Of a stretch of 64,000 nucleotides of DNA, positions 1,834 to 60,646 are shown piece by piece. Below the pieces are notes generated by a model. The model did not search any database, was not told the origin of the DNA, and saw only the letters and a list, made by a program, of their open reading frames with translations. The position numbers and the translations under genes are program-made. The DNA comes from Octopus sinensis (taxonomy: Eukaryota): NCBI RefSeq assembly GCF_006345805.1, contig NC_043000.1:8060001-8124000 (forward strand). The letters are read 5' to 3'. The stretch's first letter is position 1; each line of letters starts with the position of its first letter.

Positions 1834-2035
1834 TATTTCGTTTTTGGATTTGGTTTGCAAGATTCTTTATATGAGTTCGTGTGTTGAAGCATATTCTGTT
1901 GTGTCTGGGGAGAGTCATTTTCTTTTTGCGCCTTATAATATAACACAATCACTGGTAAAATTTCCACTTTTTTCTTATTTTTATTTTCCTAAAATTTTCG
2001 TTGCATCTTGCAACCTTTTCAATAGTCTTGACTCT
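1834..2035 (-). mobile_element. Repeat family D (probable PLE terminal repeat with variant hammerhead fold at 1989-2025)
   Basis: Same sequence at 8451-8596 (+), 30920-31125 (-) and 46174-46411 (with inversion). Confidence 0.7.
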
Positions 2036-2299
2036 GTCTGTTATTTATACTGTGTTCCCTTTTGTTTGTTTGTGTGCATGTGTGTGGGTCAGTGTGTGTG
2101 TGTGTGTGCCTGTACATGCATGCAGTAGTTTGTAATATATATATATATGAAAACATCTACTTGTAATCAACTTAACTGTGTTCAACCTACCTTAGAAAGT
2201 GAAATAAATAATAATTCTTTTTGATATTGGTACAAGGTCTGGAATTTAGGGTGTTAGGGTTAGTCAATTACAATGACCCCAATGGTCAAATGACACTTA

Positions 2300-4744: not shown

Positions 4745-5721
4745 TGTATGTATGTATGTATGTATGTGTGTATGTGTCATTATTCAGTTTCATTTCAAGA
4801 TGTTTTGGCATTAGAAAAAGAACCAGTTTCTAACCTAGATCCTTGGCTCCTTCACTAGAATTTCAGCAACATCAACAGGGTATTTTTGTATGTATGATTC
4901 TGTGTAGATTTGTATGTGTTGCTTTATGTATGTATTCTCATGCATATAGTTGCATATCTAGACATGCTCATATAAATTTAAATGATAAACTTCTGGAAAG
5001 TTTTACGAATTTTTACTGTTCCAGTGATGGATAGGATCTGTAGTCTTCGAATCAGCTCTCTCCTTTCTGGTTTTGAGAAGCCTAATTTCTCAAGACTGGT
5101 ATTTAGGCAGTGTGTTACATATCTAAGTGCCTAAATGATTACAGGTATATATCTAGTACATGTGTATATGTGTGAATGTATTTGCACATCCTGGCCTTGA
5201 CATCGTCTGATTGTTGTAAATGACTATCACCATTATATGATCCGTGCCATTTGTTTCCAGTCTTCTGTGAGAACATGACCTGTCATGAAGGAATATTAGC
5301 TTGCTTGGAAACAAGTGAAGGCTGGCAACCAAAAGGGCAATTGGCTATAGAAAATCATCTGCCTTGATAAATTCTGTCTGACCCATACAGGCATGAGACA
5401 ATGTACATTAAAACAATGATGATGATGATGATGACAATGTTGAATGTGATAATTTTTCTACAATATTTGCTCACATTGAACATTTTTATGCATGATTTCA
5501 AAAGGCATTCTCCTAATATTTTTGCTGATGCAGGAAACCAAGCTCTTGAACCTATTTCTAAAATCATTTATGCACAGAGAGAGAGAGTGAAAGAGAAAGA
5601 CGGACAGAGAATACTTAAAAGTGAGAGGAGAATTCTAAAAGTGTCAGGTAGTTTCTGTCATTAAAAATCCTTCTTTGGGAATTGTCTGGAGGTAGAAGAA
5701 TATGAAGAATATGAAAGAAAA

Positions 5722-5957
5722 GGCAACCTGGCAGAGCTGGCAGAAACGTTAGCATGCCAGGCAAAGTGCTTAGCAGTATTTCACCTGCCGTTACGTTTGG
5801 AGTTCAAATTCCGCAGAGGTCGACTTTGCCTTTCATCCTTTTGGGATCGATAAATTATGTACCAGTTACGCTCTGGGGTCGATGTAGTCGACTTAATCCC
5901 TTTGTCTGTCCTTGTTTGTCCTCTCTATGTTTAGCCCCTTGTGGGCAATAAAGAAAT
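5722..5957 (+). mobile_element. SINE family B with 17-bp target-site duplication
   Basis: GAGCTGGCAGAA head, GAGTTCAAATTCC box, GTCGACTTTGCCTTTCATCC core; AAGAATATGAAAGAAAA at 5705-5721 and 5958-5974. Confidence 0.85.
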
Positions 5958-6569: not shown

Positions 6570-6955
6570 GGCACAGGAGTGGCTGTGTGGTAAATAGCTT
6601 GCTTACCAACCACATCATTCCAGATTCAGTCCCACTGTATGGCACCTTGGGCAAGTGTCTTCTACTATAGTCTCGGGACAACCAAAGCCTTGTGAGAAGT
6701 CCGTCGTATATATGTATATGTATATATATGTGTGTGTGTGTGTGTGTTTTGTGTCTGTGTTTGTTCCCCCAACATTGCTTGACAACTGATGCTGGTGTAT
6801 TTACATCCCTGTAACTTAGTGGTTCGGCAAATGAGACCAATAGAATAAGTACTAGGCTTACAAAGAATAAGTCCTGGGGTCGATTTGCTCGACTAAAGGC
6901 AGTGCTCTAGCATGGCCGCAGTCAAATGACTGAAACAAGTAAAATAGTAAAGAGT
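6570..6955 (+). mobile_element. SINE family A
   Basis: Full-length match to 952-1358. Confidence 0.85.
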
Positions 6956-7412
6956 ATATATATATATAAACACACACACACACACACATACATATATATT
7001 TATATGTGTGTGTATTCACACATATTATATACGTATTTGAGTGTATGTGTGTGTGTGTATATATATATATTTATTAATATTTGGCAGAAGTAAGAGAGTA
7101 ACACAAAGGCCATGGTCAAAACAATACAAGTTATAAAAGTTTAATGATACAGATCGATGGTTAGGACTATTAACTAGTTAGGACTATTATCTAACACCTT
7201 TTCTCCATATATCTCTTGAAGAACAGGTCCTAATCGTATAAAATTGATATATCAGGTAATAGTAATAGATTATTAATTTTTGATAAGTTGCATTATTTGG
7301 CCGTAGCCCTTTTGTAAAGCACTTTTGCCTATTACAAAATTACAAAAACAAAAGTTTAAACATTTATATACATCAGATAACGCTTTCTGAAGACTATACT
7401 ACTGTACCATAT

Positions 7413-7863
7413 TACTCTTTTACTCTTTTACTTGTTTCAGTCATTTGACTGCAGCCATGCTGGAGCACCGCCTTGAAGGGTTTTAGTAAAAGAAATCAAC
7501 TCCTAGACTTATTCTTTGTAAGGCCAGTACTTATTCTATCAACCTCTTTTTGCTGAAGCAATAACTTATGGGGCCATAAACACACCAGCATCGGTTGTCA
7601 AGCAATGGTAGCAGGGGACAAACACAGACACACATAAATAGATATATATACATGCATACATACATATATATGTATACGCATGCACACACAAACACACACA
7701 CACAGAGTAGGCTTCTTTCAGTTTCTATCTACCAAATCCACTCAAGGCTTTGGTTGGTCTGAGGCTATAGTAGAAGACATTTGTTCAAGGTGCCACACAA
7801 TGGAACTGAACCTATAACCATGTGGTTGGGAAGCAAACTTCTCACCACATGGCCATGCCTACT
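7413..7863 (-). mobile_element. SINE family A
   Basis: Reverse complement of family A including TACTCTTT tail. Confidence 0.85.
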
Positions 7864-8310
7864 CCCATTTATGTTTTACCTGTAACTTGTTTCAATTGAT
7901 TTCAGTCCTTGCTGTGGTGCCACCTTGAACACTTTGAACAAACAAATTAACCTTGGTACTTTTTATTTTTTTATTTTGCCTTAAGCAAAATTCTATTGAT
8001 CACCTTTGGCCAAACTGCTAAGTAACAGAGACATAAACAAACCAACACAGGCTGTCATGTAGTTGTTGGGGACAAACACAAAAACTGACTTTTATTTTCC
8101 TCTACTGGTTCTTATGCACACACACACATACACTACACTTTGATCTTAGTCAATAGGCCGAGAAATATTTATATCAAGTCATATGTGTGTGTGTGTGTAT
8201 ACATGCGTTTGCATGCATGAATATATATGTGTGTGTGTGTGTGCATCTATATGTGTGGGTGTTGTATTTATGCATAAATGTATGTGTATTTCTTTACATA
8301 CATGTATATA

Positions 8311-8667
8311 CAGTTGCCTAAAAGTAGGTTTTGCAGTTATTCAACTATCTCTTTTGCATTCATATATTAATGGTTTAGATCTTAATTTTAGAAAAAATGT
8401 GAAACCATTATTCTATGCTAATTTAGTTAATTGTAAGATAGAAATTTAAAGAGAGTCAAAACTATTGAAAAGGTTGCAAGACGCAACGAAAATTTTAGGA
8501 AAATAAAAATAAGAAGAAAGTGGAAATTTTACCGGTGAGTGTGTCACATAATAAGGCACAAAAAGAAAATGACCCTCCCCAGACACAACAGAAATTTAAA
8601 TGTAATGTTTTAAAAGAAATTTAGAGTGCCTACGTGATAACTGTAAACCTACTTTTGGGCCACCCTG
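8311..8667. mobile_element. Tc1/mariner-type MITE with nested repeat D
   Basis: Imperfect terminal inverted repeats CAG.TGCCTAAAAGTAGGTTT / AAACCTACTTTTGGGCCACCCTG with TA on both sides. Confidence 0.7.
8462..8498 (+). ncRNA. Variant minimal hammerhead fold (U3-A8 core) in repeat D
   Basis: CTA | TTGAAAA | G | GTTGC-AAGAC-GCAAC | GAAA | ATT-T | TAG; palindromic AAAATTTT at stem III; stem I only 3 bp. Confidence 0.5.
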
Positions 8668-10995: not shown

Positions 10996-11118
10996 GTTTA
11001 GTTTATCCCCCATTACTGCTTGGCAACCAGTGTTGGTGTGTTTACGTCCCTGTAACTTAGTTGTTTGGGAAAAAGGACCAAGAGAAGTAACAGGCTTACA
11101 AAAATAAATAAATAAATA

Positions 11119-11527
11119 GGCACAGGAGTGGCCGTGTGGTAAGTAGCTTGCTTATGAACCACATGGTTCTGGGTTCAGTCCCACTGTGTGGCACCTTGGG
11201 CATGTGTCTTCTACTATAGCCTCGGGCCGACCAAAGCCTTGTGAGTGGATTTGGTAGATGGAAACTGAAAGAAGCCCGTCATATATATGTATATATATAT
11301 GTATGTGTGTGTATATGTTTGTGTGTCTGTGTTTGTCCCCGCAACATCTCTTGACAACTGATGCTGGTATGTTTACGTTCCTGTAGCTTAGTGGTTTGGC
11401 AAAAGAGACCGATAGAATAAGTACTAGGCTTACAAAAAGAATAAGTAAGTCCTGGGGTCGATTTGCTCAACTAAAGGTGGTGCTCCAGCATGGCCACAGC
11501 CAAATAACTGAAACAAGTAAAAGAGTA
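11119..11527 (+). mobile_element. SINE family A
   Basis: Full-length match to 952-1358. Confidence 0.85.
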
Positions 11528-11679
11528 AATAAGTACTGGGATCAATTCATTTGACTGAAAATTCTTCAAAGTGGTGTCCCAGCCTGGCCACAGCCGAGGA
11601 AATGTTTAAAGTCAAATTATGAAAGATAACAGTGATATTAATGAAGGTGATAATGCTGGTGGTAGTGATGATGGTGCTG

Positions 11680-14554: not shown

Positions 14555-15824
14555 CGAGGGGCGTTCAATAAGTAATGCCCCTGACCCACTTGCAGTTGTT
14601 TGATCTAGCTGAAAGTTTGCATGTGCACTTATTTATACCTCTATAGATTAAGTGGCGAATTACAGCTCTGAACTAATTGTGGTTTCTGATTTACAGGTGT
14701 TTGAACTGAGTCAAGTGTGAAATGGAGCCTGTTGAGTGTCGAGCAGTGATCTGGTTTTTGTATTTGAAAGGACGCACACCACGGGAGACTTTTGATGAAA
14801 TGAAAGTAGCTTATGGTGATGATGCCCCATCATATGACCTTGTAAAACGCTGGCATTGTGAATTCAAACATAGTCGGAACTCTGTGGAAACAGCTCCCAG
14901 ATCTGGTCGCCCCCTTCTGCCGTTGATGAGACGTCTGTCCGTCAAGTTGAGGCTGCCATTTTGGAAGGTCAATGCATAACTATTCGCTAAATAACCCACG
15001 AGGTCAAGATTAGTACCGGGTCTGTGGAAACTATCATTCATGACCATTTGCATATGCAAAAGGTGTCTGCCAAATGGATTTCCAGGTTGCTCACACCTTT
15101 CCAGAAGCAAGAACACGTTGAGTGCTCGAGGATGAATTTGGAGATGTGCCAAGAAGATGAGTCAAAATTTTTCAAAAGACTGATCACACAGGATAAAACC
15201 TGGGTCCATCACTATGATCTAGAGACCAAAGCCCAGTCAATGCAGTGAAAGCACCGTGACTCACCTCCTCCAAAGAAGGCAAGGGTGCAGCCCTCCGCTG
15301 ACAAGGTTATGCTCACAGTCTTCTGGGACCTGGACGGAGTAGTGATGACAGATTTCCTGGCAAAGGGTACCACAATTACAGGAGCCTATTATGCTTCACT
15401 TTTGAGGAAATTAAGAGAAGCTATTAAAATCAAGAGGCGGGGCAAGATCAGCAAAGGCATCCTCCTCCTGCAGGACAACGCTCCGGTCCACAACTCGCGT
15501 GTCACCAGATCAGAAGCACAGGCGTGCCGCTATGAACTCCTCCCCTTGCACCCTCTGATTTTCACCTCTTCCCAGCCATGAAGTTGATTTTGAAAGGAAA
15601 GCGTTTCCCAGATGATGCAGCCTTGATTTCTGAAGTCATGTCGTGGTTGGAGGACCAAGCTGGGGTCTTCTACAAAAACGGTCTTCAGAGCTGCATCAAA
15701 CGATGGAAGAAATGCGTAACTCTGGGTAGTTCCTATGTTGGAAAAGCCTAATAACTGTGCCAAGTTTCGTTGCTCTACTGCTATGGGAAGTGGGTCAGGG
15801 GCATTACTTATTGAACGCCCCTCG
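14555..15824 (+). mobile_element. Full-length mariner transposon (1270 bp) in a (TA)n tract
   Basis: Perfect 37-bp TIRs CGAGGGGCGTTCAATAAGTAATGCCCCTGACCCACTT (14555-14591, 15788-15824), TA on both sides. Confidence 0.97.
14722..15751 (+). pseudogene. Mariner transposase, disrupted
   Basis: MEPVECRAVIWFL...RSGRP; WISRLLT (WVPHEL equivalent); ITQDKTWVHHY; LLQDNAPVH; LAPSDFHLFP; frameshift near 14915, internal stops, HPPYSPD segment missing. Confidence 0.95.
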
Positions 15825-16511: not shown

Positions 16512-17560
16512 CAGGGTATCCCAAAAGTCACTGATGGAACAGTTCTTAATTTTACGAATAAATGCATGAACTGTTGATACAATATAAAGGGCATAACAGA
16601 AATTAATAATAAGGCTGTGAACTGGCAGAAACGTCAGCACGCCGGGCGAAATGCTTAGCAGTATTTCATCTGTCTTTACATTCTGAGTTCAAATTCCACC
16701 GAGGTCGACTTTGTCTTTCATCCTTATGGGGGTCAATAAATTAAGTACCAGTTATGCACTTGGGTCAATGTAATCATTGTCCTTGTTTGTCCCCTCTATG
16801 TTCAGCCCCTTGTGGGCAATAAAGAAATAAGAAATTAATATACACAAGGACATCACTTAAATGGCAGCCATTTTCAGCTTTGCCCACCTGTGCTCTTTAC
16901 AAAACTTGCACCATAATCCCCTCAAGAGTTTCAAACCCCACTTATCTGATTTTTCTATTCATGTTCTCCTTCAGTTGCACCAGGGTCTCTGATTTGTTGA
17001 TATAAACACTCTCTTTCAGGTATCCCCACAAGAAAAAGTCCAGGCTAATCAAATCTGGGGAATGTGAAGGCCATTTGACATTGTCATAGCAGAAGATTAT
17101 TCTCTTTCCAAAGCACAGCCATAGCAGCTGCATTGTTTCTCTTGTGGTATGAGCTGTTGTTCCATCTTGCTGGAACCATGTGTGAGGTCTATTTTGAAAG
17201 ACTGGGTGCAAAAAGGATCTCAATCATGGATACCTGAAAGATGGGGTTTATGTCAACAAACTGGAGACCCTGGTACAACTGAAGGAGAAATAATAGAGAA
17301 ATCAGTGAAGTAGGGTCTGAAACTCTTTAGGGTGTTATGGTGCAAGTTTTGGAAAGAGCACGGACATTCGAAACCGAAAATGGCTGCCATTTAAGAGATG
17401 TCATTTTTCATATGTGATGTAGTGGTGTTGCAACATTTGACTTGTGCATATTAATTTCCATTATGTCCTTTATATTGTACTAAAATTTTCATGCATTTAT
17501 TTGTAAAGTTAAGGAAGTTATTAAAAACCGAAACTCATCAGTGACTTTTTGGACACCCTG
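16512..17560. mobile_element. Fold-back Tc1/mariner (DD41D, rosa-type) derivative built from two 3' ends
   Basis: TA-CAGGGT.TCC.AAAAGTCACTGATG ends; minus ORF 16942-17223 QQDG...WPSHSPDLISLDFFLWGYLK with 41 residues between the two Asp; 16850-17025 is inverted at 17225-17400. Confidence 0.9.
16609..16829 (+). mobile_element. SINE family B inserted in the left arm of the DD41D element
   Basis: 11-bp TSD AGAAATTAATA at 16598-16608 and 16830-16840. Confidence 0.85.
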
Positions 17561-17849: not shown

Positions 17850-18480
17850 CAACACATGCAAGTATCACTTCATTCAGAGGCTGAGCCTGTGAAGATCTGG
17901 AAATGTCTATGATGCATTTGAGAACTTTACTGTTTCAAATAAATTGCAAAGAGCTAACAGTAAATTGGAAGACATGTGTAGTACCCTATCAAAGGCCTTC
18001 TCCAGAACAATGGACTCTAGGTGTAGAGGCTAGCTCTACACTGTCAAAGATGGTATCAATGGTACACCATTCTTTAATTCATTGTAGTATAACATTTTTC
18101 TCTAACTTCCATAATTTTGTTGCCTACTTACTTACATCTTTCTGGAATCCCTCTCTTCCCATTCTAGCAGTCAATGAAGATACTGTTATGCCGGTCATTG
18201 ACAACAATTCCTTACTACTGACTAACATCTGTCCTACTTCAGCATGTTTTCAGCATCTCAAGGACTATATCTAATGGGACAGCTGCTTCCTCTGCTTTCA
18301 TATGCTCAAGAGCCATTATGATGATATAACTGTTGATTTCAATAACTGGTGCCTCGTTTAAGCCGATGTGGGATAATTCCATTCTTTCCTATGTGTTCTC
18401 CTCACTCAGCAACCTCTCGTAGTAATTTTTTTCTTTTTATCAGCATCAATGAAAGTAAGTGTTTCATTATCAATACTTAC
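17850..18480 (-). mobile_element. Old RTE reverse-transcriptase remnant
   Basis: Minus frames read YYERLLSEEN, MALEHMKAEEAAVPLDIVLEMLK and VLEKAFDRV, paralleling the long RTE. Confidence 0.7.
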
Positions 18481-20879: not shown

Positions 20880-21729
20880 TCTTTATATATATAAAAGAAA
20901 GGTTGTGTGATTGTCTACTCCGATTTAGATTCCTAACTACTCCCACATTTTGCGATGCAGTTTAACCAAAACCGGGTATCTTATAGTCGTGATTCATATC
21001 GAGCCCTTCTGGGTATTAGCGCGTGTCTACGATGAGTCTACGATTTTACAAATAATTTACCATAATTTTTTTCCATTTTAATGCATATTTTTTTAAAATA
21101 AAGGGAAGTAACTCTCAAACTTCACACCAATATGCGTGCTCATATGCGACGTAATATCACATCAGCAGCATTTCCTCACACCCTCCTTGCACTTGGCGAA
21201 GGCAAAATACCAGGGGATGAAAATGGTAATATTGCCATCGATTCCATTTGTACCATTGTTAAGACGCCTTCTGATCTCAGAGATGCAGTGTTCCCAGATC
21301 TACAAGCTAATTATCAGAATATGGATTGGATTGGCAAAAAGGCTATACTGGCCCCGACGAATAAAACTGTTCACCATATTAATGATGAAATGCTAAAACT
21401 CATTCCTGGGGAAGTCTATGTATATCAGTCTATCGATACAACTCCTGACCCAGAGGACGTCATCAACTATCCAATAGAGGTACTCAATTCCTTTGAGCAC
21501 CCCGGACTACCACCACACATTCTCAAACTTAAAGTTGGTGCCCCTATAATGCTCATCAGAAATTTGGTTCCCCCAAAACAATGCAATGGCACACGTTTGA
21601 TCGTTAAGTCCTTATCTCCCACAGTAAACTTATATCAATATTTGCCTGAATAATCATCATAATTCAGTGCAATCATTAACAGTACTTTCAAGCAATTCAG
21701 CCCCGAGCAACGCCGGGAAATTCTGCTAG
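20880..21729 (+). mobile_element. Non-autonomous Helitron (850 bp)
   Basis: A|TC 5' end (TCTTTATATATATAAAAG); 3' hairpin CCCGAGCAACGCCGGG (21702-21717) then CTAG|T. Confidence 0.92.
21132..21653 (+). CDS. Open fragment of Helitron PIF1-type helicase
   Basis: AILAPTNKTVHHIN, YPIEVLNSFEHPGLPPHILKLKVGAPIMLIRNL, CNGTRLIV motifs; 173 codons without a stop. Confidence 0.85.
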   Translation: MRAHMRRNITSAAFPHTLLALGEGKIPGDENGNIAIDSICTIVKTPSDLRDAVFPDLQANYQNMDWIGKKAILAPTNKTVHHINDEMLKLIPGEVYVYQSIDTTPDPEDVINYPIEVLNSFEHPGLPPHILKLKVGAPIMLIRNLVPPKQCNGTRLIVKSLSPTVNLYQYLPE

Positions 21730-22349
21730 TAGAAAAATAAAAGAATGTCTAACTTCACTTCTAGTTGCTGGGTATAGTTCCTTGCCCCTTATTTGCCTCA
21801 AATCTCTCCAAGTTTCTGTCTTGTCTTTTATGACTCCATCAATCATACCAGTCAACTACCATGCTACCTTCCATCTTACTGGAACTTTCTCCATTCACAG
21901 TCATTTCACATCTGAGAAGGCTCTCTCTCTCTCTCCCTCTTCTCAGCATAAACATCGCCAAATACTTCTTTTAAATCTGTGTTTAACCAAAGAATCTTTC
22001 AGGTTCCATCATCATTATCATCATCGTTCTTCTCATCGTTGTCTTCATCATCATCATCATCATCGTCATCGTCATCGCTGTCATTGTTGTCATCATTGTC
22101 ATCGTCGTCGTCGTCGTTGTTATCATCATCATTGTTGTCATCATCATCATCATTATTGTCACCACAATGTGGCAGATTTTCTACACTTGGTTGCCCATAG
22201 TGTTGCTAACATTCACTTGTTTCCAAGCACAGTAATATTTCTCCATAGTTAGACATGTTTTTGTGGAAGATTGGAAATGAAGACTTGTATGAAAGTGATA
22301 CACACACACGCACACACACACATACACACACACACACACATACATACAT

Positions 22350-22380
<31 letters not shown>

Positions 22381-22800
22381 TACATACATACACACACACA
22401 CACATACATACATACATACATACATATTGTGGACTCCCCTCTCATCCATTACAGATGAAGTGTTCCACCATTTCTTGCTGGATAAACATCCTGCAAGAAT
22501 GATTTGTATATAGAGATCAAATGTTTGTGCTGTGCATTAATAACCAGCACAAATGATTTGTTAAAGTGATCAAATGTCTATGTTGCACACTCCCTCCTCC
22601 AAATCGATATTGCCTGTTCAGATTTATGGTGTGCCACTTGTCAGATGTTAGAAGTGATTATAGGGCAATTTCAAATGAAGTGCTTTGCTTGAAAACACAA
22701 TGTACCATCCATTCTGAATATTGAAACCTCAATCTTGCTATCAGGAATGCAACAGCCTGACCACTTGGCTGTGTATATAAATACATATAAACTTATATAT

Positions 22801-23216
22801 ACTCTTTTACTCTTTTATTTGTTTCAGTCATTTGACTGTGGCCATGCTGTAGCACTGCCTTTCGTCGAGCAAATCGACCCCAGGACTTATTCTTCAGAAG
22901 CCTAGTACTTATTCTATCGGTCACTTTTGCAGAACTGCTAAGTTACAGGGACATAAACACACCACCATCGGTTGTCAAACGATGTTGGGGGACAAACACA
23001 GACACACAAACATATACACACACATACACATATACATATATATACATATATACAATGGGCTTCTTTCAGTTTCTGTCTACCAAATCCACTCACAAGGCTT
23101 TGGTCAGCCCGAAGCTATAGTAGAAGATACTTGCCCAAGGTGCCACACAGTGGGACTGAACCCAGAACCATGTGGTTCGTAAGCAAGCTACTTACCACAC
23201 AGCCACTCCTACACCT
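22801..23216 (-). mobile_element. SINE family A
   Basis: Reverse-complement match. Confidence 0.85.
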
Positions 23217-23229
23217 ACATATATATTTT

Positions 23230-23732
23230 TTTTACTTGTTTCAGTCAATTGACTGTGGCCATGCTGGTGCACCACCTTGAAGGGTTTTAGTCGAACAAAT
23301 CAAACCCAGGTGTTATTATTTGTTAAGCCCAGTATTTATTCTATTGGTCTCTTTTGTTGAAGCACTAAGTTACAGGGATGTAAACATACTAACACCAGTT
23401 GTCAAGTGGTGATGCGGGGGACAAACACAGACACACACACATATACATATACACACACACACACATACACAAACACACACACACATATACATATACACAC
23501 ACACACACATACACAAACACACACACACATATACATATACACACACACATACACAAACACACACACACATATATATGATGAGCTTCTTTCAGTTTCTGTC
23601 TACCAAATCAACTCACAAGTTTTTTTAGTTGGCCCATGGCTACAGTAGAAGACACTTACCCATGCAGTGGGACTGAACATGGAACCATGCAGTTGGGAAG
23701 CCAGCTCCTTACTGCACACCCATGCCTGCACC
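23230..23732 (-). mobile_element. SINE family A with expanded CA tract
   Basis: Reverse-complement match. Confidence 0.8.
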
Positions 23733-28769: not shown

Positions 28770-29285
28770 AATGTGTGTATGTGTGTGCATGTACATGTTA
28801 ATGAATATATTTATATTTGCATACATATATATATACACACACACACACATACATACACACACACATACATACACATACACATACATACATACATGCATAC
28901 ATACATACATACATACATACACACATACACTCATACACACATAAATACATACACACACATATACATACATACATGCATACATACAAACATACATACATAC
29001 ATACATACATACATACATACATACATACGCACATACACTCATACACACATAAATACATACACACACACATACATACATACATGCATGCATGCATACATAC
29101 AAACATACATACATACCTACATACATACATACATACATACATACATACAAACATACATACATACATACATACATACATGCATGCATACATACATGCATAC
29201 ATACATACAAACATACATACATACATACATACATACATACATACAAACGTACATACATACATACATACATACATACATACATACA

Positions 29286-29315
<30 letters not shown>
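28770..29315. repeat. (CATA)n microsatellite with higher-order duplication
   Basis: CATA units; CACATACACTCATACACACATAAATACATAC occurs twice. Confidence 0.9.
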
Positions 29316-29317
<2 letters not shown>

Positions 29318-29334
29318 AAGGCTTATTTGTCCCT

Positions 29335-30258: not shown

Positions 30259-30915
30259 GAGCAATATATAATGTTTCAGCAGATGATAAATCTGATATGT
30301 AACTGTAGGTATCAAAATAAATGCCGTTTAAATAACCAATGCTTTAGAATTAATTTAGGGTATAAATGTTCTGTTAAAACACTTGATAAATTTCAGTATT
30401 ACATTGGTTCCATGGCATCTAAATTCAAATTTAGATTACATAATCGTATTTATTCCTTTAATAACCATTTCATATTTTGGTACCAGGTCAGCAAATTTGA
30501 TGGGTGGAGAAGTTAATCCAGTGCTCAACTGGTACTTATTTTTCAATCCTGAAAGGATGGAAGGAATAGTTGACCTTGGTCGAATTTGAACTCAGAACAT
30601 AGAGTTAGATGAAATGCCACTAAGCATTTTGTCTGATGTGCTAATGATACTGCCAGCTCATCCCCTTATATATTCCTTTAATAATAAAAGGAAAACTTTG
30701 AACACTGCACTTACTAAATATATCTGGGATGTCAATGACAAGAATAATGTTTATTCAGTTTCATTATTATACATGCCACACTTCCATAAAAACTGGATGT
30801 GGAAACTGTTATTTTTACCTTCTGTGGAAGCAAGTATAGGTCGGGACTAATTGATAAGTGTAATGAATTATTGATTTGTTGTTCCCACAAAGCCAATAAA
30901 ACTTTCTTGAATATT
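29335..30915 (+). mobile_element. Decayed Penelope-like element (RT plus GIY-YIG), internally deleted
   Basis: VINWFK..IMQIDISSYYSS; FDVTMGTSDSLQITHLVGIYIL; DIVWFN; YSCMPNL; CNCRYQNKCRLNNQC...YYIGS...FKFRLHN; NTALTKYIWD; DKCNELLICCSHK; interrupted by (ATA)n and a SINE B (30485-30666). Confidence 0.85.
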
Positions 30916-30919
30916 CTCT

Positions 30920-31125
30920 CTAAGTATTTCGTTTTGGGATTTGGTTTGTAAGATTCTTTATATGAGTTCATGTGTTGAAGCATATTCTGTTGTATCTGGG
31001 GAGAGTCATTTTCTTTTTGTGCCTTATATTATAACACACTCACCGGTAAAATTTCCACTTATTTCTTATTTTCATTTTCCTAAAATTTTTGTTGCATCTT
31101 GCAACCTTTTCAATAGTCTTGACTC
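30920..31125 (-). mobile_element. Repeat family D
   Basis: Match to 1834-2035; hammerhead-like fold 31080-31116 carries GAAA to AAAA (CpG decay). Confidence 0.7.
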
Positions 31126-32488
31126 TCTCTAAGTAACTTCCCTAATTTTAATAGAATAACACTCTTAGTCTTTGTATTGTGCCAGATTTATCACAGATGA
31201 TTCTATATAAAATATTCTCAAGATTTTAATATTTCTTGCATAAAGGTTTTTCTATGTAGCCCGTTTTTTATTTTTTAACAAATGATTTTATTAAATTTCA
31301 ACTCTAATTGATGTAATAGTATTGAACTACAGCCAAGTGAAATTGTAGTCGTGGCTGTTGCCATTGTCATGTAAATGGTACCCATGTTGGTGACATGTAA
31401 AAAGCACCCAATTCACTCTCAGAGTGGTTGGCATTAGGAAGGGCATCCAGCTGTAGAAACTCTGCCAGATCAGACTGGAGTCTGGTGCAGCCCCCTGGCT
31501 TACCAGTTCCAGTCAAACTGTTTCACCCATGCCAGCTTGGAAAACCGACATTAAATGATGATGATGATGATGATGATGATGAATTCCTGTGACATTCTTA
31601 TAGTTCTATTTTGTAACTTTATTCTAATTACTTTTCCTCATTCCTTCAAATTTTATCTGTTTCTCAATTTACTCTTTATATTTTTGCCTTCCTCCAATTA
31701 TAAAGAAGTAAACTGTTCAAGAATATAGTAGTAAACTGTCACCTGTTTGAACATCTTTGTATATATTAGTCAGTTTATCTCTCCCTGGGTACAAAAGTAT
31801 ACAATAAATCTTTAAATTCTTAAATCTGTCAGATGCTCTGAAGACTTACAATAGATCTAACAAATGGACCTCAGAAGACATTGTTTTCATAGTCCATCTA
31901 CTTTGGTGCTTTTCTGATAGTGAAACAATCTACTGTTTAATTTGTTCCCATGATTTTCTAAGCCCCTCCCATTCTCATTATATTTATTTAACTAATTTGG
32001 CTAAGTAGATTTGTATTGCATTTGCACCAAGTTTTATGAGATGGTTGATGGAAAATTTCCTGTAATATTATATAGTTTTATACACACATTTTTTTATGTG
32101 TATAAACTAACATGTTAATTGATGTAACATTTCCACTAATTATCAAGACGATTGTAACTGATTAATAAATGTAATACTGTAATCTGTATTCCTTTGTTTG
32201 CCAATATTTAGACTCTGCATTGGAGGCAGCGATCTCATAATCAATACGTTTTCCTGAATTTACAGTTCACATGAAATATCTTTCTTTGGATTCAATGAAT
32301 ACTAATTCTAATTTTCTTTCCCTTATATTCTGTTAGCCTGGTTTTCACATGATTGCAGACTGAAGTACTTGCTTAACTTTCTTAAATTCCTACTTTGTTA
32401 TAGACATACATACATACATGCATATATATATATAAAGCGAGAGAGGGAGAGAGAGAGAGAGAGAAAGAGAAAGATATATAGAGAGATG

Positions 32489-33815: not shown

Positions 33816-36800
33816 CATCATCATCATCATCATCATCGTTTAGCGTCCGTTTTCCATGCTAGCATGGGTTGGACGGTTCTACTGGGGTCTGTGAAGCCAG
33901 AAGGCTTCATCAGGCCCAGTCAAATCTGGCAGTGTTTCTACGGCTGGATGCCCTTCCTAACGCCAACCACTCCGTGAGTGTAGTGGGTGCTTTTTACGTG
34001 CCACCCGCACTGGTGCCAGACAGAGCTGGCAAACGGCCACGAACGGATGGTGCTTTTTATGTGCCACCGGCACGAGGGCCAGGCGAGGCTGGCAACGGAC
34101 ACGAAACGGGGCGGTGCTGGCGACGGTCGCGAAGCGGAAAGTTCTCTTACATGCCACCGGCACTGGTAACACATCTGCAATTTCCATTGATCGATTTCCA
34201 TTGATCGATTTCGATTCTGATCGTCACTTGCCTCAACGGGTCTTCACAAGCAGAGTTTTGACATGCCACCGGCACTGGTAGCACATCCGCAATTTCCATT
34301 GATCGATTTCGATTCTGATCCTCACTTGCCTCATCACGTCTTCACAAGTAGAGTTTTGTGTCCAAGAAGAAGGAAGGTATGCATACGTAGGCTGGCTCCA
34401 TCCCATGTAGAAGGCCACGGGTTATGGACTCACTTGTCCTGCTGGGTCTTCTCGCGCACAGCACACTTCCAGAGGTCTCGGTCTCTAGTCATTTCCTCAG
34501 TGAGACCTAAAGTTCGAAGGTCGTGCTTCACCACCTCGTCCCAGGTTTTCCTGGGTCTGCCTCTTCCACAGGTTCCCTCAACCGCTAGGGTGTGGCACTT
34601 TTTCACACAACTATCTTCATCCATTCTCGCCACATGACCATACCAGCGCAAACGTCTCTCTTGCACACCACAACTGATGCTTCTTAGGTCCAGCTTTTCT
34701 CTCAAGGTACTTACACTCTGCCGAGTGTGAGTACCGGCATTACACATCCATCGGAGCATACTGGCTTCATTTCTAGCGAGCTTACGCATATCCTCAGCAG
34801 TCACAGCCCATGTTTCACTGCCATGTAGCATGGCTGTTCGTACACACGCATCATACAGTCTGCCTTTCACTCTGTGCGAGAGGCCTTTTGTCACCAGCAG
34901 AGGTAAGAGCTCTCGAACTTTGCCCAAGCTATTCTTACTCTAGCAGTTACACTTTCAGCACACCCGCCCCCACTGCTGACTTGGTCACCTAGGTAACGGA
35001 AACTATCAACTATTTCTAGTTTTTCTCCCTGGAAAGTGACGGAAGTTGGTCTCAGAGCATTTTCAGTGTTATTGTTCCTGAGCATCTGCCACATACAAAA
35101 ACCATCTTCCTAGTTAGCCTTCCTTTGACATTGCTGCATCTCTTATGTGTCCATAGCTTACACTTGGTGCATCTTATAGAGTTTCTACCTACACCTTTTC
35201 TACAGATCGAGCAGGGCCATCTACCTGAAGGTGTTTGTGATTTGTCTACCTTCTACTGATTACGACTTTGGTTTTAGCTAGATTGACTCTGAGGCCCTTC
35301 GATTCTAATCCTTGTTTCCACACCTGAAACTTCTCCTCCAGTTCTGATAGCGACTCAGCAATTAGAGCAAGGTCATCAGCATAGAGGAGCTCCCAAGGGC
35401 ATCCTGTCTTGAATTCCTCCGTTATTGCTGGAGGACTATGATAAATAGGAGGGGGCTGAGGACTGAGCCTTGGTGGACCCCTACCTCTACCCGGAATTCT
35501 TCACTGTACACATTTCCAACCCTCACCCTACTAGCGGCGTCCCTGTACATGGCCCGCACAGCTCTCACTAACCATTCATCTATCCCTAGTTTCCTCATTG
35601 CCACCAGATAAGGGATCGGGGGACCCTGTCGAAGGCTTTCTCCATGTCAACAAAAGCCAGGTACAGGGGCTTATCTTTGGCTAGGTATTTCTCCTGCAGC
35701 TGCCTTACCAGGAATATAGCATCAGTAGTACTTTTCCCTGGCACGAACCCAACTGCATCTCATCTAAACTAACTCTCTCTCTAATTAGTTGGGCTATGAC
35801 CCTCTCCGTAACCTTCATCACCTGGTCCAACAGCTTGATACCTCTGTAGTTATTTGTATCTAGGGCATCACTTTACCTTTGTAGCAGTTGACTATTATAC
35901 TGCTACACCAGTCATTGGGTATGACCCCTTTGTGTATCACCTGATTAACTATACGGGTGACTAGGCTATAGCCGACACTACCAGACATTTTGAGCATCTC
36001 TGCAGTGATTCCTGATGGGCCTGGGGCTTTCCCTGTCTTCATGCTTCTAATTGCCTTAGCTACCACGGAACTATCAACTTGGATAGCTGGTCCCTCTGTT
36101 GGGTCAACATTCGGCAGACTCTCTTTATCCCATTCATTTTTTCATTCAGCAACCTTTCATAGTGGCATCTCCAAACCTCTCTCTTTGCATCCTCATTTAG
36201 CGCAAGTGAACCATCTTTCATGCGAACACACTTCTCTCCTACCACATCACGATTCTCTCTCACACACTGTCTTGCAACACGAAACACCTCCAGTCTTTGG
36301 TCCTCACGGCGCAGAACATTGGCAAATTTTTTCTTATCTGCTTCCCCTCTGGCTAAATAAACCTGTCTCCTAGCTTCTCTTTTGGCAGTCTGATACAATC
36401 CCCTGCTACCCCCATTTTTCCAGACCTTCCAAGCCTGTCTTTTCTCTAATAGCCCTGTCTACAATATTGTTCCACCACCACGTTATTCTAGGTCGAGAGG
36501 GGACTTTGCACCAGCCACAGATCTGGTCAGTGGCTCTCAGCAGGTTGTCCCTTAGAAACGTCCAGCTGTCTTCTACCCCCTGTGATGCTCTATCCCCTTC
36601 TACTTCGTCAGAGGCTTCAAGTAATATGTCCCTAAATCTCTGTCCATTTGCAGGATCTTTAAGCTTCCAGATCCTTCTTCTCCATATTTGTTCTTCTGGT
36701 TGTCCTCCTAGTCCTGATCCTAAAGTCACTAACTACCAGTCTATGTTGTGGGGTACATTCTTCACCTGGGAAGGTTTTGGCATTTATAAGCAGCCATCTC

Positions 36801-37466
36801 TCCCTTGCCTTGTAAGGATGTAGTCAATTTGGCTGGTATGTGGCCCGATTGGTAAGTGACTAGGTGGCTGGTAGGTTTCCTGAAGTTAGTGTTGCAAATC
36901 ATAAGATTATTTGCATCGCAGAACTCCAGCAGCCTGGTTCCCTCCTCGTTGCGGGAGCCATAGCCATAGCCTCCATGTACGCCATGGAAGCCCCCAGCAT
37001 GTCGTCCAACGTGACCATTGAAGTCACCAGCCACAAAGATAAGGTCTCTGTCGTTCGTCAACAAGGTAGTCTGCAGTAGAGTGTCATAGAATCGGTCTTT
37101 CTGTCCATCGGGTAGCCCCGACTGAGGAGCATAGGCTGATATAATGGTTGCTAAACTATGATGAAGCACTAATCTAATCTTAAGTATTCTGTCACATACT
37201 CTGATTACCTCAATTACTTTATCTACCCATTTCTCAGCGATAAGTATACCACGCCACCAACCCCGTCAGTGTTCCCTGCCCAGAAATCTTGTACCTGCGT
37301 TCCTTGCCTGTGAGGAACCTAGCTGCCTCCTCTCCACCTTATTTCTTGCATGCAACATATATCCACACATCTCTGTTCAAGCATCTCGACTATCTCACCA
37401 GACCTACCTTTCAGAGTGCCAACGTTGAGGGTGCCAACCCTGAGGGTGTGGGAGGCATGGGCTCTA
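33815..37466 (-). mobile_element. Near full-length RTE-clade LINE with about 600-bp 3' UTR and (GAT)n tail
   Basis: APE (LNVGTL, MQEIRW, SAYAPQ, AGDFNGHVG), RT (DMEKAFDRVP, GVHQGSVLSPLLF, LLYADDL, FRYLG), GRGRPRKTW; flanked by (TA)n on both sides. Confidence 0.97.
34430..37460 (-). pseudogene. RTE ORF2 (APE-RT with PHD-type insertion), split by several frameshifts
   Basis: ORF-track pieces 36762-37169, 36406-36729, 36060-36398, 35860-36066, 35422-35604, 34891-35094 and 34430-34927 tile one protein. Confidence 0.92.
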
Positions 37467-40049: not shown

Positions 40050-40093
<44 letters not shown>

Positions 40094-45784: not shown

Positions 45785-46173
45785 GTGGCTGTGTGGTAAG
45801 TAGCTTGCTAACCAACCACATGGTTCTGGGTTCAGTCCCACTGCGTGGCATCTTCTGCATAGCCCCGGGCCGACCAATGCCTTGTGAGTGGATTTGGTAG
45901 ACGGAAACTGAAAGAAGCCTGTCGTATATATGTATGTATATATATAAGTGTGTGTGTGTATGTTTGTGTGTCTGTGTTTGTCCCCCTAGCATTGCTTGAC
46001 AACCGATGCTGGTGTGTTTACGTCCCCATCACTTAGCGGTTCAGCAAAAGAGACCGATAGAATAAGTACTGGGCTTACAAAGAATAAGTCCCGGGGTCGA
46101 TCTGCTCGACTAAAGGTGGTGCTCCAGCATGGCCGCAGTCAAATGACTGAAACAAGTAAAAGAGTAAAAGAGT
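45785..46173 (+). mobile_element. SINE family A
   Basis: Close match to the family consensus. Confidence 0.88.
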
Positions 46174-46411
46174 AAGATTCTTTATATGAGTTCGTGTGTT
46201 GAAACATATGCTGTTGTGTCTGGGGAGAGTCATTTTCTTTTTGTGCCTTATTATGTAACACACTCACCAGTAAAAACTATTGAAAAGGTTGCAAGATGCA
46301 ATGTAAATTTTAGGACAATAAAAATAAGAAAAAAGCGAAAATTTTACCGGTGAGTTTGTTACATAATAAAGCACAAAAAGAAAATGACTCTCCCCAGACA
46401 CAACAGAATTT
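46174..46411. mobile_element. Repeat family D with internal inversion
   Basis: 65-nt arms 46211-46275 and 46342-46406 (62 of 65 complementary) around the hammerhead-like segment. Confidence 0.8.
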
Positions 46412-60239: not shown

Positions 60240-60242
<3 letters not shown>

Positions 60243-60536
60243 GCAGCATGGAAGTTGTTTGTAAGCCATTTAAGAAACACACAAAAGACGTTCAATTCAC
60301 TTTAACATTCAAGTTTAATTTGTCAAAATATTTTCGTTGCTTTAAGACCGCGACCTGTTCATGACAAAAATCCGTGCTGTATCAGATGCAGCACGGATTT
60401 TTGTCAGTTTTGTCAGTGAAAGGTCGCGGTCTTAAAGCGACGAAATATTTTGACAAATTAAACTTGAATGTTAAAGTGAATTGAACGTCTTTTGTGTGTT
60501 TCTTAAATGGCTTACAAACACCTTCCACGCTGCAAT
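60240..60536. repeat. About 297-bp palindrome (1-nt spacer at 60384) of a probable PLE end; each arm carries a variant hammerhead fold
   Basis: Arms complementary over about 145 nt with few differences; arm consensus TTTGTCA GTGAACA G GTCGC..GCGAC GAAA ATATT T TGACAAA. Confidence 0.9.
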
Positions 60537-60646
60537 TGTTTTCGTTTCAGCACACGATCTCAGATCAAATCACTTGCTATGCAAGTACATCTCCATAATA
60601 TTATTATTATTAGATAATAAAATGTATGGAATATTAGCCAAATATA

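What the first reader, a model, noticed from the sequence alone, without database searches (positions are those of the whole stretch)
8462..8498. Hammerhead-like fold with compensatory U3-A8 core in multi-copy repeat D
Seen: the topology stem I - 7-nt linker - G - perfect 5-bp stem II - GAAA - palindrome AAAATTTT - stem I is that of a minimal hammerhead, but the linker is UUGAAAA instead of CUGANGA. The same linker occurs in all four copies (1989-2025, 8462-8498, 31080-31116, 46277-46313), so it is a family trait and not decay. Established: positions 3 and 8 pair in the active hammerhead fold and U3-A8 can replace C3-G8. Inference: a dimer-cleaving variant ribozyme that CUGANGA-based searches would miss. 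Weak point: stem I is only 3 bp.
Basis: partly seen in the sequence, partly recalled or inferred. Interest (0 to 1): 0.75.

Follow-up and report, generated by a model that had tools for sequence, protein, structure and literature searches.

The report
Penelope-type minimal hammerhead in octopus repeat
The motif is real and most likely a known kind of stripped-down hammerhead ribozyme carried by Penelope-like retroelements, here sitting in a short mobile repeat of an octopus genome, so it is a new example of a known thing and cleavage remains untested.

Summary
The 37-nt motif is exactly where stated, and all four copies exist. They belong to a 140-205 bp dispersed repeat ("D") in an octopus genome.

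The layout matches, feature by feature, the "min-HHR" hammerheads described in 2014 in Penelope-like retroelements (PLEs):
- a core with the natural U3-A8 swap;
- one unpaired base before helix II;
- a G10.1-C11.1 pair;
- no helix III loop, only a palindrome;
- a short helix I.

A descriptor built from those published features hit only D copies and none of 1000 shuffled windows.

Repeat D also inserts the way PLEs do: target-site duplications of 9-12 bp, head-to-head inverted pairs, and two alternative 3' ends in AC-rich sequence about 95 and 150 nt after the predicted cut.

A distant sister family ("E", 60240-60597) has the same layout with compensatory changes in helices I and II.

Against this reading:
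- no Rfam hammerhead model matches;
- no PLE protein gene lies nearby;
- helix I is only 3 bp;
- only 2 of 6 D copies keep every feature, and the rest decay neutrally, mostly at CpGs.

Verdict: probably a new member of a known class. It is not a new ribozyme variant, and catalysis is untested.

The parts
8451..8589 (+). Repeat D, copy c2 (short form, about 139 bp). The + strand is the inferred sense (A-rich) strand.
   Evidence: Self-BLAST and alignments. Boundaries are set by the flanking 11-bp direct repeat (sequence read).
8440..8450 (.). Left target-site duplication AGAAATTTAAA of copy c2. The right copy is at 8590-8600.
   Evidence: Longest common flank substring is 11 bp.
8590..8600 (.). 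Right target-site duplication AGAAATTTAAA of copy c2.
8462..8464 (+). Helix I, 5' strand (C2.3 U2.2 A2.1).
   Evidence: Sequence. It pairs with 8496-8498. The helix is present in the MFE fold of the full-length element RNA computed on copy c1.
8465..8472 (+). 5' core strand U3 U4 G5 A6 A7 A8 A9, plus one unpaired G (8472) between A9 and G10.1.
   Evidence: Sequence. It is identical in all 6 D copies. U3-A8 and the extra nucleotide are published min-HHR traits.
8473..8487 (+). Helix II hairpin GUUGC-AAGAC-GCAAC (G10.1-C11.1 ... C10.5-G11.5). It is 6 bp with a 3-nt loop in copies that carry AAGAU.
   Evidence: It is the only helix in the MFE of the isolated 37-mers, -5.2 to -6.4 kcal/mol, z -1.1 to -2.2. 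The 10.3-11.3 pair is U-A in D and C-G in family E.
8488..8495 (+). 3' core: G12 A13 A14 A15.1 A15.2 U16.2 U16.1 U17. AAUU is a palindromic helix III that can pair only between two molecules. The predicted cleavage is between 8495 and 8496.
   Evidence: Sequence. G12 is lost in c3 and L011a, and A13 in c4.
8496..8498 (+). Helix I, 3' strand (U1.1 A1.2 G1.3).
   Evidence: Sequence.
1834..2039 (-). Repeat D, copy c1 (long form, 206 bp). The motif at 1989-2025 is fully intact. No target-site duplication was found.
30927..31123 (-). Repeat D, copy c3 (long form), flanked by TCTCTCTAAGTA at 30915-30926 and 31124-31135. The motif at 31080-31116 has G12->A (31090).
46269..46410 (+). Repeat D, copy c4, direct arm (short 3' end). 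The motif at 46277-46313 has C11.1->U (46302) and A13->U (46304).
46173..46275 (-). Repeat D, inverted 5'-truncated arm joined head-to-head to copy c4. It abuts the 3' tail of a tRNA-derived SINE (45786-46175).
60381..60597 (+). Sister family E, direct arm (long 3' end). Its hammerhead-like region at 60409-60457 has helix I UUUGUCA/UGACAAA, linker GUGAAAG, helix II GUCGC/GCGAC, GAAA, and an AUAU palindrome.
   Evidence: nhmmer hit with the D profile, E=0.009. Sequence, self-BLAST and alignments.
60240..60387 (-). Sister family E, inverted arm (short 3' end, next to an (AAT)n microsatellite), 89% identical to the direct arm. Its hammerhead-like region is at 60319-60368.

Best explanation
Repeat D is a short (about 140-205 bp), non-coding, non-autonomous retroelement of an octopus genome. 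It is, or derives from, the terminal RNA module of a Penelope-like element (PLE) and is probably copied by a PLE reverse transcriptase/endonuclease encoded elsewhere. The same applies to its distant sister family E at 60240-60597.

The motif at 8462-8498 is its PLE-type minimal hammerhead (min-HHR) on the sense (A-rich) strand. Its parts are helix I (CUA/UAG), the core U3 U4 G5 A6 A7 A8 A9, one unpaired G, helix II (GUUGC/GCAAC), G12 A13 A14, the palindrome A15.1 A15.2 U16.2 U16.1, and U17. The tertiary C3-G8 pair is replaced by U3-A8.

By analogy with published members, a single copy cannot form helix III. If the RNA cleaves at all, it would do so between 8495 and 8496, only when two copies pair through AAUU or when the element's protein holds the fold, and probably slowly.

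Shown here: the sequence architecture, its improbability by chance, the mobile-element nature of D, the insertion signatures, and the cross-family compensatory changes. Inferred: PLE dependence, the sense strand, and any catalysis.

The genomic copies themselves are dead relics that decay neutrally. Only 2 of the 6 copies covering the motif keep every feature.
For: (1) The architecture equals the published min-HHR traits: no helix III loop with palindromic 15.x-16.x, a conserved nucleotide between 9 and 10.1, G10.1-C11.1, short helix I, and the U3-A8 covariant (PMC4209133, against the sequence).

(2) Descriptors built from those traits hit only D copies c1 and c2. They gave 0 hits in 400 and 600 dinucleotide shuffles of the 64-kb window, and 0 in 61 kb of other octopus DNA.

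(3) D is a mobile insertion. The direct repeats are 11 bp (c2), 12 bp (c3) and 9 bp (L011 composite), with no poly(A) and no terminal inverted repeats.

(4) PLE-like insertion signatures (described in PMC8557442 and PMC11167929):
- Head-to-head inverted pairs with the 5' ends in the middle occur three times: c4, L011 323-628 and family E.
- There are two alternative 3' ends about 52-55 nt apart. In the L011 and E composites, one arm has the short end and the other the long end.
- The ends lie in AC-rich sequence about 94 and 150 nt after the predicted cut. In the anole PLE the distance is 85-92 nt, plus a 30-40 bp tail.
- Targets are AT-rich or microsatellite.

(5) Only with the A-rich strand as sense do the inverted pairs have their 3' ends outward, as target-primed reverse transcription requires. 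That is the strand carrying the motif.

(6) Family E is about 60-65% identical to D over its whole length. It keeps both helices with double changes at 2.2-1.2 (U-A vs C-G), 2.3-1.3 (C-G vs U-A) and 10.3-11.3 (U-A vs C-G), plus GAAA and an AU palindrome. In a simple neutral simulation all 8 pairs survive in 0.4-1.6% of trials.

(7) The MFE fold of the whole sense RNA of c1 contains helices I and II inside a domain closed by AGAGUCA/UGACUCU.

(8) Octopus vulgaris carries 31 recently active Penelope-like families (PMC13282606).
Against: - No Rfam hammerhead model matches, even at E<=10 in a 57-nt search.
- No PLE reverse transcriptase or GIY-YIG gene is in the window or next to the O. vulgaris copies. 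No tandem or pseudo-LTR arrangement was seen.
- Helix I is only 3 bp. U17 is, to my knowledge, an uncommon cleavage-site base.
- The intermolecular AAUU helix is worth about 0 kcal/mol. The competing AAAAUUUU pairing (-1.4 kcal/mol) and an intermolecular helix II swap (dimer MFE -17.1) would give inactive dimers.
- The motif is no better conserved than the rest of the repeat among copies.
- The two E arms have a 7-nt, not 8-nt, 5' core strand that fits no hammerhead core as it stands.
- My descriptor and the structural alignment of helix I between D and E were made after seeing the motif.
- The sample is small: 6 D copies and 2 E arms cover the motif.
- The 'tail' is 52-55 nt, not the published 30-40.
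Confidence: 0.6

Rival explanations
1. The motif is a conserved structured RNA element of this retroelement family, for example a protein-binding two-helix junction used for recognition by the reverse transcriptase. It looks like a hammerhead, or descends from one, but no longer cleaves.
For: Helices I and II are kept between D and E by compensatory changes, while the E core strands do not fit a hammerhead core. Published PLE hammerheads cleave poorly, and cleavage was dispensable for insertion in vitro. No genomic copy begins at the predicted cut site: 0 of 9 D-type copies or arms.
Against: The D consensus has every invariant hammerhead base in place (U4 G5 A6, A9, G12 A13 A14, A15.1-U16.1, H17) and the 3-8 positions changed together, which a mere protein-binding hairpin would not require.
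Confidence: 0.2
2. It is a chance resemblance: an AT-rich repeat happens to contain a 5-bp hairpin flanked by A-rich strings, read as a hammerhead by a permissive eye. This was my own first reading.
For: There is no Rfam hit. The isolated 37-mer folds only into the hairpin, with unremarkable z-scores of -1.1 to -2.2. Essential bases are lost in 4 of 6 copies, and there is no excess conservation. A descriptor allowing any 2 linker mismatches gives 0.2 hits per shuffled window and hit two unrelated loci, 5544-5580 and 5690-5729.
Against: The specific published architecture gave 0 hits in 1000 shuffles. The carrier shows PLE-like insertion behaviour that was found independently of the motif. The sister family E keeps the layout with compensatory changes. 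Decay of dead copies says nothing about the master copy.
Confidence: 0.15
3. Repeat D is a foldback/MITE-type DNA transposon, and the hairpin is part of its inverted-repeat structure.
For: Some copies are long palindromes (c4 46173-46410; L011 323-628) with about 9-bp flanking repeats. An internal GAGAGTCA is inverted relative to one terminus.
Against: The outer ends of the palindromic copies are not the same sequence: position 5 vs 57 in L011, and 24 vs 57 in c4. Solo copies have no terminal inverted repeats. Flanking repeats vary from 9 to 12 bp.
Confidence: 0.05

Closest known systems
min-HHR: minimal type I hammerheads in the pseudo-LTRs of metazoan Penelope-like elements, including the U3-A8 core covariant of Schistosoma mansoni Cercyon elements (Cervera & de la Pena 2014, PMC4209133)
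   Same: It shares the type I topology, the lack of a helix III loop, palindromic 15.x-16.x, one unpaired base between A9 and G10.1, G10.1-C11.1, a short helix I, and U3-A8 in place of C3-G8. It also occurs mostly as single dispersed copies and as pairs on opposite strands 100-700 bp apart.
   Different: Helix II is 5-6 bp (published 6-8) and helix I is 3 bp (published 4-5, or 2 in D. virilis). The cleavage-site base is U17. The host is a cephalopod. No PLE open reading frame was found next to any copy, and the carrier is a 140-205 bp unit.
Poseidon PLE of Anolis carolinensis (PAc): hammerhead plus internal initiation of reverse transcription (Frangieh et al. 2024, PMC11167929)
   Same: The hammerhead lies roughly 90 nt upstream of an AC-rich region where copies end. 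There are two alternative 3' ends (the 'tail'). Both target strands are used, which explains head-to-head inverted copies. Targets are AT-rich.
   Different: PAc has a canonical C3-G8 core and a protein-coding body. Its tail is 30-40 bp, against 52-55 nt here. Nothing here was tested biochemically.
Non-LTR retrozymes of animals (Cervera & de la Pena 2020, PMC7229834; Li et al. 2026 preprint, 10.64898/2026.07.22.740005)
   Same: These are short, AT-rich, non-autonomous elements carrying a type I hammerhead, and are thought to depend on PLEs.
   Different: Retrozymes are tandem arrays with canonical hammerheads and circular RNA intermediates. D and E are dispersed single units or inverted pairs, never tandem in the DNA examined.
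Canonical hammerhead families in Rfam (Hammerhead_1, _3, _II, HH9, HH10)
   Same: It shares the invariant bases U4 G5 A6, A9, G12 A13 A14, A15.1-U16.1 and H17, and two of the three helices.
   Different: No model matches at any threshold tried. There is no intramolecular helix III, the core has U3/A8, and there is an extra base before helix II.

Membership tests
Hammerhead ribozyme, canonical (Rfam models) | Scores against a curated hammerhead covariance model | tested here: not met
   There were no hits at gathering score in the whole window. No hammerhead family appeared at E<=10 in 401-nt and 57-nt searches around 8462-8498.
Hammerhead ribozyme, canonical (Rfam models) | Core C3 U4 G5 A6 N7 G8 A9 ... 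G12 A13 A14 ... A15.1-U16.1 H17 | tested here: not met
   The core reads U3 U4 G5 A6 A7 A8 A9 (+G) ... G12 A13 A14 A15.1 ... U16.1 U17. All invariant bases are present except that C3 and G8 have both changed, to a pair that can still form.
Hammerhead ribozyme, canonical (Rfam models) | Three helices around the core within one molecule | tested here: not met
   Helix II forms. Helix I (3 bp) appears only in the fold of the whole element. Helix III cannot form within one molecule because AAUU has no loop.
Hammerhead ribozyme, canonical (Rfam models) | Site-specific self-cleavage | not testable with these tools
   This needs in vitro transcription and cleavage assays.
PLE-type min-HHR (Cervera & de la Pena 2014) | Core CUGANGA or its natural covariant with U3-A8 | tested here: met
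   UUGAAAA is present in all 6 D copies. The covariant is described in PMC4209133.
PLE-type min-HHR (Cervera & de la Pena 2014) | One unpaired nucleotide between A9 and G10.1, and a G10.1-C11.1 pair | tested here: met
   G8472 is unpaired and G8473-C8487 pair. Both are listed as emergent traits.
PLE-type min-HHR (Cervera & de la Pena 2014) | No helix III loop; positions 15.2-16.2 palindromic, so that two copies can pair | tested here: met
   The sequence is GAAA-AU-U-U, with A15.1 A15.2 U16.2 U16.1 = AAUU. Family E has AUAU or AAUAUU. The predicted stability of the intermolecular helix is about 0 kcal/mol.
PLE-type min-HHR (Cervera & de la Pena 2014) | Helix II 6-8 bp; helix I 4-5 bp (2 bp in D. 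virilis) | tested here: inconclusive
   Helix II is 5 bp, or 6 bp in copies with the AAGAU loop. Helix I is 3 bp in D and 7 bp in E.
PLE-type min-HHR (Cervera & de la Pena 2014) | Consensus families with covariation and compensatory changes | tested here: inconclusive
   There is no covariation within D, because the copies are too alike. Between D and E there are three double changes in 8 shared pairs. The sample is only 6+2 sequences, and the helix I alignment is structural.
PLE-type min-HHR (Cervera & de la Pena 2014) | Lies in the pseudo-LTR of an element encoding a telomerase-like reverse transcriptase and a GIY-YIG endonuclease | tested here: not met
   Pfam on the ten transposon-like reading frames picked by eye from the list of frames of at least 90 aa found mariner, Helitron and AP-endonuclease LINE pieces only. 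None was seen in L011, judged by reading its five frames of at least 130 aa without a Pfam scan. The genome-wide search needed for this could not be run, and most published min-HHRs are also solitary.
Penelope-like element insertion signature | 5'-truncated copy in inverted orientation joined head-to-head to a direct copy | tested here: met
   This is seen at c4 46173-46275/46269-46410, L011 323-456/453-628 and E 60240-60387/60381-60597. The pattern is described in PMC8557442.
Penelope-like element insertion signature | Optional extension ('tail') giving two alternative 3' ends, often at one end of the unit only | tested here: met
   The short end is ...ACACAACAGAAT and the long end lies 52-55 nt further on, in both D and E. 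The L011 and E composites have one of each. The length differs from the published 30-40 bp.
Penelope-like element insertion signature | Partial tandem copies forming pseudo-LTRs | tested here: not met
   No tandem D or E copies occur in the window or in L010-L012.
Non-LTR retrozyme | Tandem repeats of about 170-400 bp, each with a type I hammerhead | tested here: not met
   The copies are dispersed singles or inverted pairs.
MITE / foldback DNA transposon | Terminal inverted repeats at both ends and a fixed-length target-site duplication | tested here: not met
   The ends differ between copies and between arms, and the duplications are 9, 11 and 12 bp.

The most novel reading that the evidence does not exclude
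Octopus genomes carry families of very short (about 140-220 bp), SINE-like parasites of Penelope-like elements. These consist of little more than a minimal hammerhead plus the reverse-transcription start module. In them the catalytic 3-8 tertiary pair has been swapped naturally: U-A in family D, and possibly G-C in the ancestor of family E, whose two arms read GUGAA-AG and -UGAACAG. If these RNAs cleave as dimers or with protein help in vivo, they would be the smallest hammerhead-bearing mobile units known and a natural covariation series at the ribozyme's active site.
Probability: 0.2. Interest if true: 0.45.

Novelty: new member of a known kind. Interest (0 to 1): 0.3.

Why it matters
If the assignment is right, it extends the U3-A8 minimal hammerhead, so far described for flatworm Penelope-like elements, to cephalopods. 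It also points to a very small non-autonomous carrier with the same insertion signatures as full Penelope-like elements. That is useful for annotating the many 'unclassified SINE' and unknown repeats of octopus genomes. It also gives a compact natural substrate for testing how these weak, dimer- or protein-dependent hammerheads work.

It does not reveal a new ribozyme class. The idea that CUGANGA-based searches miss such variants was published in 2014.

Tried and rejected
(1) Chance resemblance was my working verdict through. It rested on no Rfam hit, only the hairpin in the MFE, and lost core bases in copies. I revised it after reading the min-HHR literature, running the descriptor/shuffle tests and finding family E.

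(2) More copies from public DNA. A 20-mer from the repeat scanned against metagenome, GTDB genome and IMG/VR collections gave only 20-21 bp chance matches.

(3) More copies through spurious reading frames. The T-rich strand has a frame open through all copies, but its peptide has no relative in the protein database, and amino-acid changes show no constraint. It is not a coding sequence.

(4) Octopus DNA through transposon proteins. Only three O. vulgaris loci (61 kb) could be fetched. They yielded three D copies or arms (two of them one inverted pair) plus two D/E-like 3' modules.

(5) MITE or foldback transposon: rejected because the termini are inconsistent.

(6) LINE twin priming for the inverted pairs: rejected because the two arms overlap by 70-135 nt and each runs to a 3' end, rather than being one copy split in two.

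(7) The 9-bp 'duplication' TGAAACAAG and the 16-nt 'extension' at the left of the c4 composite. I withdrew these when that stretch proved to be the 3' tail of the neighbouring tRNA-derived SINE.

(8) Conservation among dead copies as a test of function. It is uninformative, because copies decay neutrally. The repeated G12->A and C11.1->U changes sit in one CpG.

(9) Lunse, Weinberg & Breaker 2017 on dimeric PLE hammerheads could not be read because it is not held.
Full report
**1. What is in the sequence**

Window 8462-8498 (+) reads CUAUUGAAAAGGUUGCAAGACGCAACGAAAAUUUUAG. A 38-nt pattern finds exactly four copies, at 1988-2025(-), 8462-8499(+), 31079-31116(-) and 46277-46314(+). They carry 0-2 mismatches, and none is expected by chance.

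Two things were not stated. First, the listed parts overlap: the palindrome AAAAUUUU shares bases with GAAA and with stem I. A consistent numbering is:
- C2.3 U2.2 A2.1 (helix I, 5' strand);
- U3 U4 G5 A6 A7 A8 A9 (core);
- an extra unpaired G;
- helix II, G10.1-C10.5 / G11.5-C11.1;
- G12 A13 A14;
- A15.1 A15.2 U16.2 U16.1 (palindrome);
- U17;
- U1.1 A1.2 G1.3 (helix I, 3' strand).

The cut would fall between 8495 and 8496.

Second, two of the four copies have lost core bases. Copy 31080-31116 has G12->A. Copy 46277-46313 has A13->U plus C11.1->U.

**2. The motif is part of a dispersed repeat in an octopus genome**

The window has about 36% G+C and is full of interspersed repeats and microsatellites. 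A LINE reverse-transcriptase fragment (34430-34927) and a SINE-derived reading frame find their closest relatives in Octopus vulgaris and O. bimaculoides.

The four motifs lie in a repeat ("D") that is 88-94% identical over 140-206 bp. D comes in two forms:
- a long form: c1 1834-2039 and c3 30927-31123;
- a short form lacking about 52-55 nt at one end: c2 8451-8589 and c4 46269-46410.

Three 20-kb O. vulgaris loci reached through transposon proteins hold further D sequence:
- L011 holds an inverted pair (323-456/453-628), both arms covering the motif, and a 5'-truncated copy (18327-18452);
- D/E-like 3' modules lie next to SINE ends at L010 6549-6657 and L011 9915-10060.

Scans of metagenome, prokaryote-genome and viral collections gave only chance 20-mers.

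**3. First reading: chance**

No Rfam family matched at gathering score. No hammerhead model appeared even at E<=10 in 401-nt and 57-nt searches. The isolated 37-mers fold only into the helix II hairpin, with z-scores of -1.1 to -2.2.

Among the six D copies that cover the motif, only c1 and c2 keep everything. The others have these defects:
- c3 and L011a have G12->A.
- c4 has A13->U.
- L011a also has an 11-nt deletion that removes the cleavage site.
- Both L011 arms are truncated so that the 5' strand of helix I is lost.

Deviations from the majority base are 16/226 cells in the motif against 52/978 elsewhere. The recurrent changes sit in CpGs. This shows that the genomic copies are not under selection.

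**4. The literature changes the picture**

Cervera & de la Pena 2014 (PMC4209133) defined "min-HHR" hammerheads in the pseudo-LTRs of Penelope-like elements (PLEs) across metazoans. Their traits are:
- type I topology;
- no helix III or loop 3, only the conserved bases with palindromic 15.2-16.2, so that two copies pair;
- a short helix I (4-5 bp; 2 bp in Drosophila virilis);
- a long helix II;
- a conserved unpaired nucleotide between 9 and 10.1;
- a conserved G10.1-C11.1 pair.

In Schistosoma Cercyon elements they also found a natural covariation, U3-A8 instead of C3-G8, with about 1,300 hits. Most motifs are solitary or occur as pairs on opposite strands 100-700 bp apart. Cleavage in vitro is absent for monomers and weak for dimers and trimers.

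Every peculiarity of the D motif is on this list.

**5. Is the match more than chance?**

I wrote a descriptor from those published traits: a C3-G8 or U3-A8 core, 0-1 extra base, G10.1-C11.1, helix II of 4-8 bp, GAAA, complementary 15.2/16.2, U16.1, H17, and helix I of at least 3 bp. It hit only c1 and c2, nothing in 61 kb of O. vulgaris DNA, and nothing in 400 dinucleotide shuffles of the window.

A broader version allowed any Watson-Crick 3-8 pair and a 4-8 nt palindrome. It gave the same hits and 0 in 600 shuffles.

By contrast, allowing any two linker mismatches gives 0.2 hits per shuffled window. It picked up two unrelated real loci, at 5544-5580 and 5690-5729. The descriptor was written after seeing the motif, which weakens the statistic somewhat.

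**6. Independent evidence from the carrier**

D is a mobile insertion. Copy c2 is flanked by AGAAATTTAAA (8440-8450/8590-8600). Copy c3 is flanked by TCTCTCTAAGTA (30915-30926/31124-31135). The L011 composite is flanked by TGAAAATGC (315-323/626-634). There is no poly(A) and no terminal inverted repeat.

Three times a 5'-truncated copy is joined head-to-head to another copy:
- c4: 46173-46275 with 46269-46410;
- L011: a perfect palindrome centred on CAATTG;
- family E (below).

Only with the A-rich strand as sense do the 3' ends point outward, as target-primed reverse transcription requires. That is the strand with the motif.

Copies end at one of two sites in AC-rich sequence, about 94 and about 150 nt after the predicted cut. 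In the L011 and E composites one arm has the short end and the other the long end.

These are the published hallmarks of PLE insertions (PMC8557442):
- 5' truncation;
- an adjacent inverted 5'-truncated copy;
- an optional tail, often at one end only;
- microsatellite or AT-rich targets.

In the anole PLE both target strands are cut and extended. Reverse transcription starts at two internal sites in an AC-rich stem-loop 85-92 nt downstream of the hammerhead cut, and the tail is the stretch between them (PMC11167929). The tail here is 52-55 nt rather than 30-40. O. vulgaris has 31 recently active Penelope-like families (PMC13282606).

Against this, no PLE gene is in the window or beside the fetched copies, and no tandem copies were seen.

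**7. A sister family**

The D profile weakly hits 60420-60588 (E=0.009). This is family E: a direct arm at 60381-60597 and an inverted arm at 60240-60387 (89% identical), inserted in an (ATT)n/(TA)n microsatellite. E aligns with D over its whole length at roughly 60-65% identity and has the same layout:
- helix I UUUGUCA/UGACAAA (7 bp);
- a 7-nt linker, GUGAAAG or UGAACAG;
- helix II GUCGC/GCGAC, with GCAAC in the inverted arm (a CpG change);
- a 9-nt loop;
- GAAA;
- an AUAU or AAUAUU palindrome;
- a U run.

Relative to D, three pairs differ on both sides and stay paired: 2.2-1.2, 2.3-1.3 and 10.3-11.3. In a simple neutral simulation, all eight D pairs survive in 0.4-1.6% of trials. They survive with at least 3 double changes in about 0.04% of trials.

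Caveats apply. The helix I alignment is structural, and only the helix II alignment came from MAFFT. In addition, neither E arm has a core strand that fits a hammerhead as it stands. The two arms differ by two single-base indels exactly at positions 3 and 8, so an ancestral GUGAACAG (G3-C8) is possible but unproven.

**8. Energetics**

In the MFE fold of the full sense RNA of c1, helices I and II both appear, inside a domain closed by AGAGUCA/UGACUCU.

The intermolecular AAUU helix is worth about 0 kcal/mol. The 8-bp AAAAUUUU alternative (-1.4 kcal/mol) would bury A13, A14 and U17. The homodimer MFE is a helix II swap (-17.1 kcal/mol). Any activity would therefore be weak or need a protein, as reported for this class.

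**9. Verdict**

The most likely explanation (0.6) is a PLE-type minimal hammerhead with the known U3-A8 core, in a short non-autonomous PLE-like retroelement of octopus. The copies in the window are decaying relics.

The rivals are:
- a conserved but non-catalytic structured element (0.2);
- chance (0.15);
- a foldback DNA transposon (0.05).

It is a new member of a known kind. Catalysis and the PLE partner remain to be shown.

Noticed in passing
window 60240-60597: There is a second, distantly related repeat family ('E') with the same hammerhead-like layout. It is present as a head-to-head inverted pair inserted in an (ATT)n/(TA)n microsatellite. Its two arms differ by single-base indels at core positions 3 and 8.
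   Followed up: partly
window 45786-46175, 47717-48147, 22800-23232, 11106-11535, 958-1360, 49614-50035, 6574-6956, 39821-40259, 7412-7877: An abundant tRNA-derived SINE of about 430 bp has at least 9 copies in 64 kb. Its 3' tail is ...GTAAAAGAGTAAAAGAGTAA. The stretch just before the tail resembles the region of D/E downstream of the hammerhead. In O. vulgaris (L011 9915-10060) a SINE tail is followed directly by an E-like 3' module.
   Followed up: partly
L010 6549-6657; L011 18327-18452; window 46173-46275: Three D-type copies all begin within 6 nt of the same internal point (GGTAAAAT in the T-rich orientation), about 30 nt downstream of the predicted cut. The c4 arm abuts a SINE end and the L010 copy a SINE head; the L011 copy abuts a sequence I did not identify. 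This may be a truncation hot spot or a separate 3' module shared with SINEs.
   Followed up: no
window 1844-2128 (+) and the same frame in the other D copies: A reading frame on the T-rich (antisense) strand stays open through every D copy. The peptide has no database relative, and substitutions are not constrained. It is probably an effect of T-rich composition.
   Followed up: yes
window 15285-15581, 16942-17223, 21132-21653, 34430-37169, 62905-63758: The window contains fragments of a mariner transposase, a Helitron-type Pif1 helicase and AP-endonuclease LINEs (endonuclease and reverse-transcriptase pieces). No Penelope-like protein was seen.
   Followed up: partly
window 28800-29320 and related stretches near 22298-22426, 39000-39530, 51013-51144: There are long arrays of a short CA/TA-rich repeat of roughly 4-8 bp periodicity. 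Similar arrays lie at several places in the window.
   Followed up: no
window 5544-5580 (-) and 5690-5729 (+): Two unrelated low-complexity loci satisfy a hammerhead descriptor that allows any two linker mismatches. They are useful as examples of what chance gives at that looseness.
   Followed up: yes
window 46148-46156 and 46411-46419: The 9-mer TGAAACAAG occurs on both sides of the c4 composite, but the left copy lies inside the neighbouring SINE's 3' region. Whether it is a duplication or a coincidence is unresolved.
   Followed up: partly
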